From positions 1 through 33,500 of the forward strand of contig NW_021832033.1 in assembly GCF_006345805.1 (NCBI RefSeq): a stretch of DNA of 33,500 nucleotides, given 5' to 3'. How positions within the stretch are numbered: position 1 is the stretch's first letter; every line of letters starts with the position of its first letter. The DNA is from Octopus sinensis. Lineage: Eukaryota. This document shows positions 28,722 through 32,468 of this stretch, piece by piece. Below the pieces are notes generated by a model. It did no database searches, was not told the origin of the DNA, and saw nothing but the letters and a program-made list of their open reading frames with translations. The translations under genes were made by a program, and so were the position numbers.

Positions 28722-31700
28722 TTGATGAGTTTCTGTGAAAAAAATATTTGGACAAAATGAAAACGGTCGTGTGATGAATATTCTGAAACATCTTTCAGAA
28801 TGGTATAAAGTTTGAAGGGGTATGATCTCCCGCGTGTATTGAAACCATTGCATAGTAGAAATTATAACGTGACATTTCTGCTAAGCTGCCGCAACTTTTT
28901 GAGACTTACATTGAAAGGTTTATATCGAAAAGTTACAAATATGTGACGAGTTTGAACAAGAATAATACCCCAGAAAAAGAAGGTATTTAATTAGTTGATT
29001 ACTAATTTTCTACACTGTCATAAAATCGCCACAATTTTGATGAGTTTCTGTGGAAAAAAATATTTGGACAAAATGAAAACGGTCGTGTGATGAATATTCT
29101 GAAACATCTTTCAGAATGATATAAAGTTTGAAGGGGTATGATCTCCCGCGTGTATTGAAACCATTGCATGGTAGAAATTATAACGTGACATTTCTGCTAA
29201 GCTGCCGCAACTTTTTAAGACTTACATTGAAAGGTTTACATCGAAAAGTTACAAATATGTGACGAGTTTGAACAAGAATAATACCCCAGAAAAAGAAGGT
29301 ATTTAATTAGTTGATTACTAATTTGCTACACTGTCATAAAATCGCCACAATTTTGATGAGTTTCTGTGGAAAAAAATATTTGGACAAAATGAAAACGGTC
29401 GTGTGATGAATATTCTGAAACATCTTTCAGAATGATATAAAGTTTGAAGGGGTATGATCTCCCGCGTGTATTGAAACCATTGCATAGTAGAAATTATAAC
29501 GTGACATTTCTGCTAAGCAGCCGCAACTTTTTAAGACTTACATTGAAAGGTTTACATCGAAAAGTTACAAATATGTGACGAGTTTGAACAAGAATAATAC
29601 CCCAGAAAAAGAAGGTATTTAATTAGTTGATTACTAATTTGCTACACTGTCATAAAATCGCCACATTTTGATGAGTTTCTGTGAAAAAAAATATTTGGAC
29701 AAAATGAAAACGGTCGTGTGATGAATTTCTGAAACATCTTTCAGAATGGTATAAAGTTTGAAGGGGTATGATCTCCCGCGTGTATTGAAACCATTGCATA
29801 GTAGAAATTATAACGTGACATTTCTGCTAAGCTGCCGCAACTTTTTAAGACTTACATTGAAAGGTTTACATCGAAAAGTTACAAATATGTGACGAGTTTG
29901 AACAAGATAATATACCCCAGAAAAAGAAGGTATTTAATTAGTTGATTACTATTTGCTACACTGTCATAAAATCGCCACAATTTTGATGAGTTTCTGTGGA
30001 AAAAAATATTTGGACAAAATGAAAACGGTCGTGATGAATATTCTGAAACATCTTTCAGAATGATATAAAGTTTGAAGGGGTATGATCTCCCGCGTGTATT
30101 GAAACCATTGCATGGTAGAAATTATAACGTGACATTTCTGCTAAGCTGCCGCAACTTTTTAAGACTTACATTGAAAGTTTTACATCGAAAAGTTACAAAT
30201 ATGTGACGAGTTTGAACAAGAATAATACCCCTAAAAAGAAGGTATTTAATTAGTTGATTACTAATTTGCTACACCTGTCATAAAATCGCCACAATTTTGA
30301 TGAGTTTCTGTGGAAAAAAATATTTGGACAAAATGAAAACTGTCGTGTGATGAATATTCTGAAACATATCTTTCAGAATGGTATAAAGTTTGAAGGGGTA
30401 TGATCTCCCGCGTGTATTGAAACCATTGCATAGTAGAATTATAACGTGACATTTCTGCTAAGCTGCCGCAACTTTTTAAGACTTACATTGAAAGGTTTAC
30501 ATCGAAAAGTTACAAATATGTGACGAGTTTGAACAAGAATAATACCCCAGAAAAAGAAGGTATTTAATTAGTTGATTACTAATTTGCTACACTGTCATAA
30601 AATCGCCACAATTTTGATGAGTTTCTGTGGAAAAAAATATTTGGACAAAATGAAAACGGTCGTGTGATGAATATTCTGAAACATCTTTCAGAATGATATA
30701 AAGTTTGAAGGGGTATGATCTCCCGCGTGTATTGAAACCATTGCATGGTAGAAATTATAACGTGACATTTCTGCTAAGCTGCCGCAACTTTTTAAGACTT
30801 ACATTGAAAGGTTTACATCGAAAAGTTACAAATATGTGACGAGTTTGAACAAGAATAATACCCCAGAAAAAGAAGGTATTTAATTAGTTGATTACTAATT
30901 TGCTACACTGTCATAAAATCGCCACAATTTTGATGAGTTTCTGTGGAAAAAAATATTTGGACAAAATGAAAACGGTCGTGTGATGAATATTCTGAAACAT
31001 CTTTCAGAATGGTATAAAGTTTGAAGGGGTATGATCTCCCGCGTGTATTGAAACCATTGCATAGTAGAAATTATAACGTGACATTTCTGCTAAGCTGCCG
31101 CAACTTTTTAAGACTTACATTGAAAGGTTTACATCGAAAAGTTACAATATGTGACGAGTTTGAACAAGAATAATACCCCAGAAAAAGAAGGTATTTATAT
31201 TAGTTGATTACTAATTTGCTACACTGTCATAAAATCGCCACAATTTTGATGAGTTTCTGTGGAAAAAAATATTTGGACAAAATGAAAACGGTCGTGTGAT
31301 GAATATTCTGAAACATCTTTCAGAATGATATAAAGTTTGAAGGGGTATGATCTCCCGCGTGTATTGAAACCATTGCATGGTAGAAATTATAACGTGACAT
31401 TTCTGCTAAGCTGCCGCAACTTTTTAAGACTTACATTGAAAGTTTTACATCGAAAAGTTACAAATATGTGACGAGTTTGAACAAGAATAATACCCCAGAA
31501 AAAGAAGGTATTTAATTAGTTGATTACTAATTTGCTACACTGTCATAAAATCGCCACAATTTTGATGAGTTTCTGTGGAAAAAAATATTTGGACAAAATG
31601 AAAACTGTCGTGTGATGAATATTCTGAAACATCTTTCAGAATGGTATAAAGTTTGAAGGGGTATGATCTCCCGCGTGTATTGAAACCATTGCATAGTAGA

Positions 31701-32468
31701 AATTATAACGTGACATTTCTGCTAAGCTGCCGCAACTTTTTAAGACTTACATTGAAAGGTTTACATCGAAAAGTTACAAATATGTGACGAGTTTGAACAA
31801 GAATAATACCCCAGAAAAAGAAGGTATTTAATTAGTTGATTACTAATTTGCTACACTGTCATAAAATCGCCACAATTTTGATGAGTTTCTGTGGAAAAAA
31901 ATATTGGACAAAATGAAAACGGTCGTGTGATGAATATTCTGAAACATCTTTCAGAATGATATAAAGTTTGAAGGGGTATGATCTCCCGCGTGTATTGAAA
32001 CCATTGCATGGTAGAAATTAAACGTGACATTTCTGCTAAGCTGCTGCCGCAACTTTTTAAGACTTACATTGAAAGGTTTACAATCGAAAAGTTACAAATA
32101 TGTGACGAGTTTGAACAAGAATAATACCCCAGAAAAAGAAGGTATTTAATTAGTTGATTACTAATTTGCTACACTGTCATAAAATCGCCACAATTTTGAT
32201 GAGTTTCTGTGGAAAAAAATATTTGGACAAAATGAAAACGGTCGTGTGATGAATATTCTGAAACATCTTTCAGAATGGTATAAAGTTTGAAGGGGTATGA
32301 TCTCCCGCGTGTATTGAAACCATTGCATAGTAGAAATTATAACGTGACATTTCTGCTAAGCTGCCGCAACTTTTTAAGACTTACATTGAAAGGTTTACAT
32401 CGAAAAGTTACAAATATGTGACGAGTTTGAACAAGAATAATACCCCAGAAAAAGAAGGTATTTAATTA
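28722..32468 (+). repeat. Right-arm tandem array, ~12 units of 314-319 bp
   Basis: The T of GAA-TG(G/A)TATAAAG recurs at 28801, 29117, 29433, 29747, 30061, 30379, 30694, 31010, 31326, 31642, 31957 and 32276. Units are near-identical. Confidence 0.95.

What the first reader, a model, noticed from the sequence alone, without database searches (positions are those of the whole stretch)
28722..32468. The transposon's internal satellite is made from the 3' end of a transposase gene
Seen: each ~316-bp unit begins GAT GAG TTT CTG TGG AAA AAA ATA TTT GGA CAA AAT GAA AAC GGT CGT GTG ATG AAT ATT CTG AAA CAT CTT TCA GAA TGG TAT AAA GTT TGA, which reads DEFLWKKIFGQNENGRVMNILKHLSEWYKV*. This aligns without gaps to residues 265-294 of the element's own transposase (DEFLWKEQYGQTAHDCLMNILKHLSEWYRV), with synonymous differences at K and G. 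The unit is therefore the last 30 codons, the stop and ~220 bp of downstream sequence, amplified to ~12 copies on the right and ~6 on the left. Established: Merlin elements can carry internal tandem repeats. Inference: here the repeat arose from coding sequence and was then copied into the opposite arm. I do not know of a described case of this.
Basis: partly seen in the sequence, partly recalled or inferred. Interest (0 to 1): 0.9.

Follow-up and report, generated by a model that had tools for sequence, protein, structure and literature searches.

The report
Octopus Merlin transposon, coding-derived arm repeats
An octopus Merlin-type DNA transposon has long inverted arms filled with a 316-bp tandem repeat that was copied from the last 30 codons, stop codon and downstream flank of its own transposase gene; this is a neat origin story but a variant of a known architecture.

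Summary
A 316-bp unit is repeated 12 times at 28722-32483 (+). It is repeated about 5 times, in inverted orientation, at 25558-27058. Unit positions 1-120 align without gaps to the 3' end of the 307-aa Merlin/IS1595 transposase ORF (27042-27965, minus), with 102/120 identical.

The direction is coding to repeat. The tail YLDEFxWR...NILxHISExYPx-stop is conserved in 22 Merlin transposases from several phyla. These end where the unit's TGA sits. The left array is physically continuous with the gene.

The coding remnants are decaying. Only 4 of the 16 units examined keep the quoted peptide.

A second copy in Octopus sinensis (L001) has the same design with only about 2 units per arm. It shares the gene/array junction and has a candidate 9-bp target-site duplication.

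The arms evolve in concert, shown by a TTAA indel fixed in both arms of one copy only and by 10 shared sites against at most 1. This supports copying between arms, but the order of events is unresolved.

Novelty is modest:
- Merlins with long inverted arms holding arrays in both arms are already in Repbase.
- Extension of inverted arms by recruiting internal sequence is known for Galileo.
- What is new is that coding sequence is the seed.
- No donor transposase was found.
- The mosaic divergence of the remnant is unexplained.

The parts
24811..33206 (-). Whole Merlin-type element, 8.4 kb, with the gene on the minus strand. The tips read GGTACTTGTCTATTGTCGTGG.
   Evidence: TIR tips lie at 24811(+) and 33206(-). 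The inverted repeat spans 24811-27058 against 28722-33206. The same element is 4.3 kb in L001, at 7899-12199.
24811..25557 (-). Outer, non-array part of the 3' arm. It has modules A-B-C-A-C and GCGCATGCGC palindromes.
   Evidence: It aligns to the reverse complement of 32484-33206 with 4.0% substitutions. Motifs were located.
25558..27055 (-). 3'-arm array of the 316-bp unit, in the same orientation as the gene. There are about 5 units, including two 133-bp deletion derivatives at 26161-26429.
27056..27175 (-). 'Unit 0': the gene's own last 30 codons plus 30 nt, homologous to unit positions 1-120. At a TATT microhomology it joins position ~27 of the next unit.
   Evidence: Ungapped 102/120 identity. 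The same junction is present in L001.
27081..27083 (-). Ancestral stop position. It is CGA in this copy (stop lost, 13 extra codons). It is TGA in the array units that keep the remnant's frame and in L001's gene copy.
   Evidence: Homologues end at this position.
27042..27965 (-). Transposase ORF of 307 aa, with an N-terminal Cys-rich zinc ribbon and an IS1595-type DDE domain.
   Evidence: Pfam PF12762 at E=1e-20, residues 143-271. It is 99% identical to O. sinensis LOC115210589. D137 and E239 are nearly invariant.
27966..28721 (-). Unique 5' region between the ATG and the 5'-arm array. An NF-Y-like CCAAT motif lies at 28060-28070.
   Evidence: There is no inverted partner. A promoter role is inferred only.
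28722..32483 (+). 5'-arm array: 12 units of 316 bp, antisense to the gene. It shows higher-order periodicity of 2 and 4 units.
   Evidence: The inner edge falls exactly at unit position 1, TTGATGAG.
32484..33206 (+). Outer, non-array part of the 5' arm.
   Evidence: It carries 17 private substitutions.

Best explanation
This is a potentially autonomous Merlin (IS1595-like) cut-and-paste transposon of an octopus, Octopus sinensis or a very close relative. It has acquired foldback-like long terminal inverted repeats.

Proposed history:
- A 316-bp segment was duplicated in tandem at the gene's own 3' end. The segment runs from codon D265 of the transposase through the ancestral stop and about 220 bp of 3' flank.
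- The same material now also forms the inner part of the opposite arm, in inverted orientation.
- The arrays change length by unequal exchange of 1-, 2- and 4-unit blocks.
- Gene conversion between the arms keeps them alike.

The coding remnants in the units are not translated and are decaying. They are passengers. If anything in the unit matters for transposition, the better candidate is its non-coding distal end. That end carries a degenerate copy of a 19-23-nt motif that is repeated three times in each outer arm.

Shown: the homology, the direction (coding to repeat), the continuity with the gene, the copy-number variation and the concerted evolution of the arms.

Inferred: the mechanisms (unequal exchange, gap repair or conversion), the order of tandem versus inverted duplication, and the absence of any function for the coding part.
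For: Homology:
- Unit positions 1-120 match the gene at 102/120 without gaps.

Direction, coding to repeat:
- The tail is conserved and homologues stop at the unit's TGA.
- The Pfam domain covers DEFLWKE.
- The tail profile scores 62.2 bits for the gene and 40.7 bits for the unit.
- Octopus relatives all read WREQYGKT..EC, like the gene and unlike the unit.
- The innermost 5'-arm unit of L001 keeps the gene-like GG at positions 20-21, an intermediate state.

Origin in place:
- The left array is contiguous and co-oriented with the gene. The unit-0 junction is shared by two independent copies.
- The outermost unit of each arm grades into homologous single-copy flank.

No coding constraint:
- Twelve of the 16 remnants examined are disrupted or altered: 11 carry premature stops or frameshifts and R10 has one substitution.

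Dynamics:
- The window copy has 12 and ~5 units, against ~1.9 and ~1.9 in L001.
- Diagnostic sites alternate with periods of 2 and 4 units.

Exchange between arms:
- The TTAA indel is fixed per element across both arms.
- The outer arms of L001 differ by 1.2%, against 3-4.7% between elements. The site pattern grouping arms by element occurs 10 times, against 0-1 for same-side groupings.

Real mobile element:
- The tips start with GG, and a 9-bp GAATTTCTA flanks L001.

Specific to this subfamily:
- Relatives L002 (58% identity) and L003 (61%) lack the array.

Motif:
- AATTAATT(GACT)ACTATTTTACA occurs 6 times, all in the arms, with 0 expected by chance. A degenerate form is present in most array units (15 matches, against 0.05 expected).
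Against: - Divergence between gene and unit is mosaic. Positions 21-52 are only 20/32 identical, while positions 1-20 and 53-118 are 80/86 identical (Fisher p=1.5e-4). A single old duplication followed by uniform drift does not predict this. It requires patchy conversion filtered by selection on the transposase, or a separate event in the middle segment.
- The inner edge of the 5' arm coincides exactly with unit position 1. The model does not explain this.
- The window copy shows no target-site duplication, and its 5' outer arm has 17 private changes. This copy may therefore be a recombinant.
- Only two copies could be examined.
Confidence: 0.8

Rival explanations
1. The coding remnant in the unit comes from a different Merlin paralogue (a donor ending in KIFGQNENGRVMNILKHLSEWYKV*), not from this element's own gene. 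The array reached this element by recombination.
For: The middle 32 nt are only 62% identical to the gene, while the flanks are 93-100% identical. This resembles a chimera of two lineages.
Against: - No protein with this tail was found among 426 homologues or among the octopus relatives inspected.
- None was found in 1.84 billion cluster representatives. That search is weak here, because clusters are at 50% identity.
- The array is contiguous with the gene in two copies.
- L001's innermost unit is intermediate, with the gene-like GG at positions 20-21.
- The unit's middle fits the family profile worse than the gene's does, as expected for decay rather than for another functional gene.
Confidence: 0.08
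2. The repeat came first. The transposase ORF merely runs into a pre-existing non-coding subterminal repeat and borrowed its C-terminus from it.
For: The ORF physically ends inside the innermost repeat, and in this copy it reads 13 codons into repeat sequence.
Against: - The 30-residue tail and its stop position are conserved in Merlin transposases of distant phyla.
- In the two relatives whose DNA was examined (L002, L003), the elements carry no such repeat.
- The Pfam model includes DEFLWKE.
Confidence: 0.02
3. The arrays are selected. Either they act as extra transposase-binding sites, as in the long TIRs of Galileo. Or they form an inverted repeat that includes transposase-coding sequence, so that read-through transcripts fold into hairpin RNA and feed small-RNA silencing of the family, as with Mu killer.
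For: - A 19-23-nt motif is repeated 3 times per outer arm and persists in degenerate form in most array units (15 matches, against 0.05 expected).
- The arms are 98-99% complementary over more than 500 nt and contain 93 nt of ORF sequence in both orientations.
- Precedents: Galileo (PMC3573991, PMC3688188) and Mu killer (PMC3440606).
Against: - The coding part of the unit and the outer arm share no significant words: 9 shared 9-mers, against 4.1 expected and a maximum of 13 in shuffles.
- A copy with only ~2 units per arm carries a candidate 9-bp target-site duplication, consistent with transposition.
- There are no binding, expression or small-RNA data.
Confidence: 0.1

Closest known systems
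Repbase Merlin families with long TIRs and arrays in both arms (Merlin-1_DR, Merlin-2_DR, Merlin-N5_DR), tabulated in S1 Table of PMC8101967
   Same: They belong to the same superfamily. TIRs are about 1 kb where a size is tabulated (Merlin-1_DR, Merlin-N5_DR). Tandem arrays sit symmetrically near both ends, for example a 79-bp period x12.5 and x9.7, or a 113-bp period x5.2 and x5.2. The paper notes that Merlin can carry internal tandem repeats as proto-satellites.
   Different: The periods are shorter. No origin is reported for those repeats. Nothing in that paper says that any of them derives from transposase-coding sequence.
Galileo (P superfamily, Drosophila): long, internally repetitive TIRs and TIR extension
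   Same: TIR length varies through expansion and contraction of internal tandem repeats. The number of repeats differs between the two arms. TIRs are also extended by recruiting internal, originally single-copy element sequence in inverted orientation (PMC3573991).
   Different: It belongs to a different superfamily. The recruited segments reported are the non-coding spacers F1 and F2, not codons of the transposase. Transposase binding sites were demonstrated in the Galileo repeats but have not been tested here.
Tetris / TIR-220 (foldback element, Drosophila virilis)
   Same: It has ~220-bp tandem repeats inside its TIRs. They derive from a duplication of part of the element itself and can seed longer satellite-like arrays (PMC4079207).
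   Different: The TIR-220 seed is the terminal TIR domain. No autonomous copy or transposase is known. Here the seed is the end of the transposase ORF, and the element still carries the gene.
Satellites derived from transposable-element sequence (e.g. the LINE-1-derived cetacean satellite; Ensat1 from Atenspm2), listed in the review PMC6947457
   Same: Part of a mobile element becomes the monomer of a tandem repeat.
   Different: Most listed sources are retroelements, with one DNA-transposon case (Atenspm2). They form free-standing satellites. Here the array stays inside a DNA transposon's inverted arms and has at most 12 copies.
Mu killer (maize)
   Same: It is an inverted duplication that includes part of a transposase gene together with a TIR (PMC3440606).
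   Different: Mu killer is a rearranged derivative at one locus, and its hairpin RNA and silencing effect have been demonstrated. Here the inverted coding fragment is only 93 nt per unit, is part of the mobile element itself, and has no expression data.

Membership tests
Merlin superfamily (eukaryotic IS1595/IS1016-like DNA transposons) | Transposase with a DDE_Tnp_IS1595 (PF12762) domain | tested here: met
   E=1e-20, 74.7 bits against a cut-off of 27, residues 143-271. There were 426 homologues; PF12762 is the only precomputed Pfam domain among the 120 listed (3 have none).
Merlin superfamily (eukaryotic IS1595/IS1016-like DNA transposons) | Conserved DDE catalytic residues | tested here: met
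   D137 and E239 are nearly invariant in alignment A1. D198, in IHSDCW, is conserved in most sequences.
Merlin superfamily (eukaryotic IS1595/IS1016-like DNA transposons) | Terminal inverted repeats whose 5' end starts with GG (stated for all Merlin families in PMC8101967) | tested here: met
   The tips read GGTACTTGTCTATTGTCGTGG at 24811(+) and 33206(-), and in L001 at 7899 and 12199.
Merlin superfamily (eukaryotic IS1595/IS1016-like DNA transposons) | 8-9-bp target-site duplication | tested here: inconclusive
   In L001, GAATTTCTA abuts the left tip and recurs 4 nt beyond the right tip. In the window copy the flanks differ (GCATTCATA and ACTGGTGCT), so there is no duplication.
Foldback-like long-TIR architecture (Galileo/Tetris type) | TIRs longer than 1 kb that contain tandem repeats, with the number varying between copies and between arms | tested here: met
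   The arms are 2.2 kb and 4.5 kb in the window and ~1.3 kb in L001. Unit counts are 12 and ~5 against ~1.9 and ~1.9.
Foldback-like long-TIR architecture (Galileo/Tetris type) | Repeats provide secondary transposase-binding sites | not testable with these tools
   There is only a lead: a 19-23-nt motif shared by the outer arm and the unit's end.
Satellite DNA in the strict sense | Long free-standing arrays at their own loci, independent of the element | not testable with these tools
   Octopus genomes cannot be searched by DNA here. A metagenome scan found nothing. In the two copies seen, the arrays are at most 3.8 kb and lie inside the element.
Mu killer-like hairpin trigger | Inverted duplication that contains transposase-coding sequence | tested here: met
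   The 93-nt ORF remnant is present in both orientations.
Mu killer-like hairpin trigger | Hairpin transcript and derived small RNAs that silence the family | not testable with these tools
   No expression or small-RNA data are available.

The most novel reading that the evidence does not exclude
Each arm carries copies of the last 93 nt of the transposase ORF, up to 12 antisense and 5 sense. Any transcript that crosses the element would therefore fold into a long hairpin that includes transposase-coding sequence. The element would then carry a built-in, copy-number-tunable trigger for small-RNA (siRNA or piRNA) silencing of its own family, a Mu killer-like device that travels with the transposon.
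Probability: 0.08. Interest if true: 0.6.

Novelty: new variant of a known kind. Interest (0 to 1): 0.3.

Why it matters
It gives a clean, datable example of how a transposon-internal tandem repeat (a proto-satellite) is born. The seed segment, its boundaries, the parental copy still attached to the gene, an intermediate unit and two copies with different array lengths are all visible.

It shows that extension of inverted arms can swallow coding sequence while the gene stays intact. It also shows that conversion between the arms homogenises a foldback-like Merlin.

For genome annotation, such arrays will produce spurious 'transposase C-terminus' hits and may mislead gene models.

It does not change what is known about how Merlin elements transpose.

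Tried and rejected
1. Donor search with a 49-aa chimeric peptide (gene residues plus the unit tail). The word index returned no candidate at all, so the result is uninformative.
2. HMMER search with the 35-aa unit peptide against 1.84 billion representatives. It gave 3 weak hits. Two are bacterial SH3-type repeat proteins that match on GEWYKV. One is a tandem-repeat 'protein' of the fish Arctogadus glacialis (E=1.9e-4 over 6 stretches), judged to be chance or unrelated.
3. Exact look-ups of the window's transposase and of a 55-aa ORF inside the unit, to find more copies. Neither is on record. P0002 and P0006 are also not on record.
4. Metagenome scan with a 35-nt unit pattern: 0 hits.
5. Shared words between the unit and the outer arm, as a test for binding sites in the coding remnant. 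The result was not above shuffles.
6. The perfect 9+9 palindrome ATTCTGAAA-CATC-TTTCAGAAT in the remnant. It is not conserved in L002's DNA, so it is taken as incidental to the codons NILKHLSE.
7. The 9-nt GAAGGAACA just inside the 5'-arm boundary also occurs in the gene's middle segment. The surrounding region is purine-rich, so this is treated as coincidence.
8. Assembly artefact. Rejected because L001, on another chromosome record, has the same architecture.
9. Pfam, tRNA and Rfam scans of the rest of the window found nothing relevant.
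Full report
**What is there**

The window is octopus DNA. The 307-aa ORF at 27042-27965 (minus strand) is 99% identical to Octopus sinensis LOC115210589, and the next relatives are other octopus proteins. The ORF carries the ISXO2/IS1595 DDE domain (PF12762, E=1e-20, residues 143-271), which marks the eukaryotic Merlin superfamily.

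TRF reports a 316-bp period at 28722-32483 (11.9 copies, 97% matches). It reports the same unit at 25558-27055 (4.8 copies, 84% matches). The two arrays are inverted relative to each other, with arms up to 557 nt that are 98-99% complementary.

The inverted repeat does not stop at the arrays. It runs from 24811 to 27058 on the left and from 28722 to 33206 on the right. Both ends finish in the tip GGTACTTGTCTATTGTCGTGG. The element is therefore an 8.4-kb Merlin with foldback-like arms of 2.2 and 4.5 kb. Only 27059-28721, the gene and its 5' region, is single-copy.

**The observation**

Anchoring on TTGATGAGTTTCT gives 12 units on the right and 4 on the left, plus one occurrence inside the gene at 27175. 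The quoted peptide is real and matches ORF residues 265-294 at 20/30 positions.

At DNA level, unit positions 1-120 align without gaps to 27175->27056, with 102/120 identical. The match is not confined to low-complexity sequence; it includes a 66-nt block with 61 identities.

The intact remnant survives only in R08, R12, L02 and L03, and R10 has one substitution. Five right-array units have TGG->TGA, two units have an earlier W->stop, and five have frameshifts, with some units carrying more than one defect. There is no coding constraint on the units.

**Direction of descent**

They do not.

- In an alignment of 22 homologues from cephalopods, gastropods, bivalves, copepods, sponges and unnamed assemblies, the consensus tail is YLDEFxWRxxxGxxxxxAFxNILxHISExYPxx. 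Most of them stop within two or three residues of where the unit has its TGA.
- A profile of that tail scores the gene's version at 62.2 bits and the unit's at 40.7 bits. Putting the unit's middle segment into the gene costs 12 bits.
- Octopus relatives read WREQYGKT..EC.N.LKHLSE, like the gene (KEQYGQTAHDCL) and unlike the unit (KKIFGQNENGRV).
- Related Merlin loci lack this array. L002 (58% identity) has none. L003 (61% identity) has 350-bp TIRs and a one-sided, non-coding 125-bp repeat.

So coding sequence is the source and the repeat is the derivative.

**Where it arose**

The left array is co-oriented and contiguous with the gene. The gene's end is 'unit 0' (positions 1-120). At a TATT microhomology it joins position ~27 of the next unit.

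A second copy of the element was retrieved from the O. sinensis assembly (L001, CM016862.1). Across the central 2.8 kb it is 98.2% identical to the window copy. It has the same tips, a 9-bp GAATTTCTA on both sides (offset by 4 nt on one side), and the same unit-0 junction. It has only ~1.9 units in each arm. The design is therefore a family trait, the junction is ancestral to both copies, and array length is labile.

In L001 the gene copy still has TGA at the ancestral stop and CGCGTGTATT after it. The window's CGA (27083-27081) and its 13-codon read-through are therefore private changes. L001 in turn has a 2-nt deletion that frameshifts the tail, which explains the odd C-terminus of the annotated protein P0001.

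The outermost unit of each arm grades into homologous but diverged single-copy flank. This is expected at the distal edge of an in-place tandem duplication.

The innermost 5'-arm unit of L001 reads GGAAGGAAATATTTGG. It keeps the gene-like GG at positions 20-21, where all other units have AA. This is an intermediate state.

**Dynamics**

In the right array, two diagnostic sites (83 G/A and 134 A/G) alternate from unit to unit. Two others (45 and 198) recur every fourth unit. The array therefore grew by exchange of 2- and 4-unit blocks. The left array holds two 133-bp deletion derivatives.

The arms evolve in concert:
- A TTAA indel is present in all four L001 units (both arms) and absent from all 16 window units (both arms).
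- In the outer, non-array arms, L001's two arms differ by 1.2%, while comparisons between elements differ by 3.0-4.7%.
- Ten sites group the arms by element. At most one site groups them by side.

Whether the tandem duplication preceded the first inverted copy cannot be decided. One fact is suggestive but unexplained: the inner edge of the 5' arm falls exactly on unit position 1.

**An unexplained feature**

Gene and unit are 19/20 identical at positions 1-20, 20/32 at positions 21-52 and 61/66 at positions 53-118 (Fisher p=1.5e-4). In L001 the last block differs from the array at a single fixed site.

My best inference is repeated short conversion between unit 0 and the array, filtered by selection on the transposase. 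Under this view, array sequence is tolerated where it still encodes MNILKHLSEWY(K/R)V, and the diverged middle blocks exchange. A patch from another paralogue cannot be excluded.

**Function**

Nothing indicates that the coding remnant does anything. The unit and the outer arm share no more words than shuffles do.

A separate 19-23-nt motif, AATTAATT(GACT)ACTATTTTACA, occurs six times in the window, all in the arms (three per arm), against zero expected. A degenerate form, TTACTAATTTGCTACA, sits near the distal end of most array units: 15 matches against 0.05 expected. If the arrays help transposition, this non-coding motif is the candidate and the codons are passengers.

A more speculative consequence follows from the structure. 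Transcripts that cross both arms would form hairpins containing ORF sequence, as in Mu killer (PMC3440606).

**Comparison with what is known**

- Merlin elements with internal tandem repeats are described. The Repbase table in PMC8101967 lists families with arrays placed symmetrically in both arms, two of them with ~1-kb TIRs (Merlin-1_DR, Merlin-2_DR, Merlin-N5_DR).
- Galileo shows both repeat-driven change in TIR length and TIR extension by recruitment of internal spacer sequence (PMC3573991).
- Tetris shows TIR repeats seeded from the element's own sequence (PMC4079207).
- Satellites seeded by retroelement sequence and by an En/Spm element are listed in PMC6947457.
- I found no description of a DNA-transposon arm repeat seeded by the transposase's own last codons. 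My searches were limited to the held library.

**Verdict**

The finding is a new variant of a known architecture. It is of moderate to low general interest (0.3), not the 0.9 that was proposed.

Noticed in passing
window 33366-33500 (+): A third copy of the element's tip (GGTACTTGTCTATTGTCGTGG followed by outer-arm sequence, 94-95% identical to 24811-24945) starts 160 bp beyond the right end and runs off the window. It appears to be the start of a second element of the same family.
   Followed up: partly
window 24800-24811 and 33206-33216: The window copy has no target-site duplication (flanks GCATTCATA and ACTGGTGCT). Its 5' outer arm carries 17 private substitutions. It may be a recombinant of two copies, which could also account for the expanded 12-unit array.
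   Followed up: partly
window 24914-24945, 25250-25259, 32774-32783, 33096-33105, 33469-33500: Palindromes GCGCATGCGC, which resemble NRF1 sites, and (CG)n tracts lie in the outer arms. The outer arm itself is modular (A-B-C-A-C), with an internal duplication and a (TG)n microsatellite.
   Followed up: no
window 28060-28070: CTGATTGGTTA (a CCAAT/NF-Y-type motif on the gene strand) lies about 100 bp upstream of the transposase ATG. It may be a promoter element; this is inference only.
   Followed up: no
window 26161-26429: There are two 133-bp deletion derivatives of the unit. The deletion joins GGGGTATGA to ATAATACCCC, that is, between a 7-nt inverted pair GGGGTAT/ATACCCC. This suggests a hairpin-mediated deletion.
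   Followed up: no
unit positions 60-81, e.g. window 29096-29117; also in the gene at 27116-27095 (minus strand): A perfect 9+9-nt palindrome, ATTCTGAAA-CATC-TTTCAGAAT, is encoded by NILKHLSE. It is not conserved in the DNA of relative L002.
   Followed up: partly
window 23741-24445 and 24507-24666: Long impure trinucleotide tracts, (CGT)n followed by (TCA)n, total about 700 bp. A 72-bp tandem duplication lies immediately left of the element.
   Followed up: no
window 17931-22562 (+): Four consecutive same-strand ORFs (470, 242, 205 and 259 aa) have no Pfam match. Their nature is unknown.
   Followed up: partly
window 3472-3605, 5163-5237, 6834-6966, 9030-9104, 13152-13279, 14128-14252; also 4773, 8480, 12402, 13911: Several dispersed short repeat families (75-83 nt, 60-87% identical) are associated with AT microsatellites. 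They are probably SINE/MITE-type octopus repeats. ARAGORN and Rfam found nothing in the window.
   Followed up: partly
L001 10808-10812 (protein P0001): The annotated O. sinensis protein LOC115210589 ends in TVWANCIRLLDEYSETSFRMV. A 2-nt deletion in that copy shifts the frame in the conserved tail, so the annotated C-terminus is a frameshift product.
   Followed up: yes
L003 9856-10399: A 61%-identical Merlin relative on an ENA contig has ~350-bp TIRs and a one-sided 125-bp x4.3 non-coding tandem repeat downstream of its gene. Repeats in the 3' region recur in this clade.
   Followed up: partly
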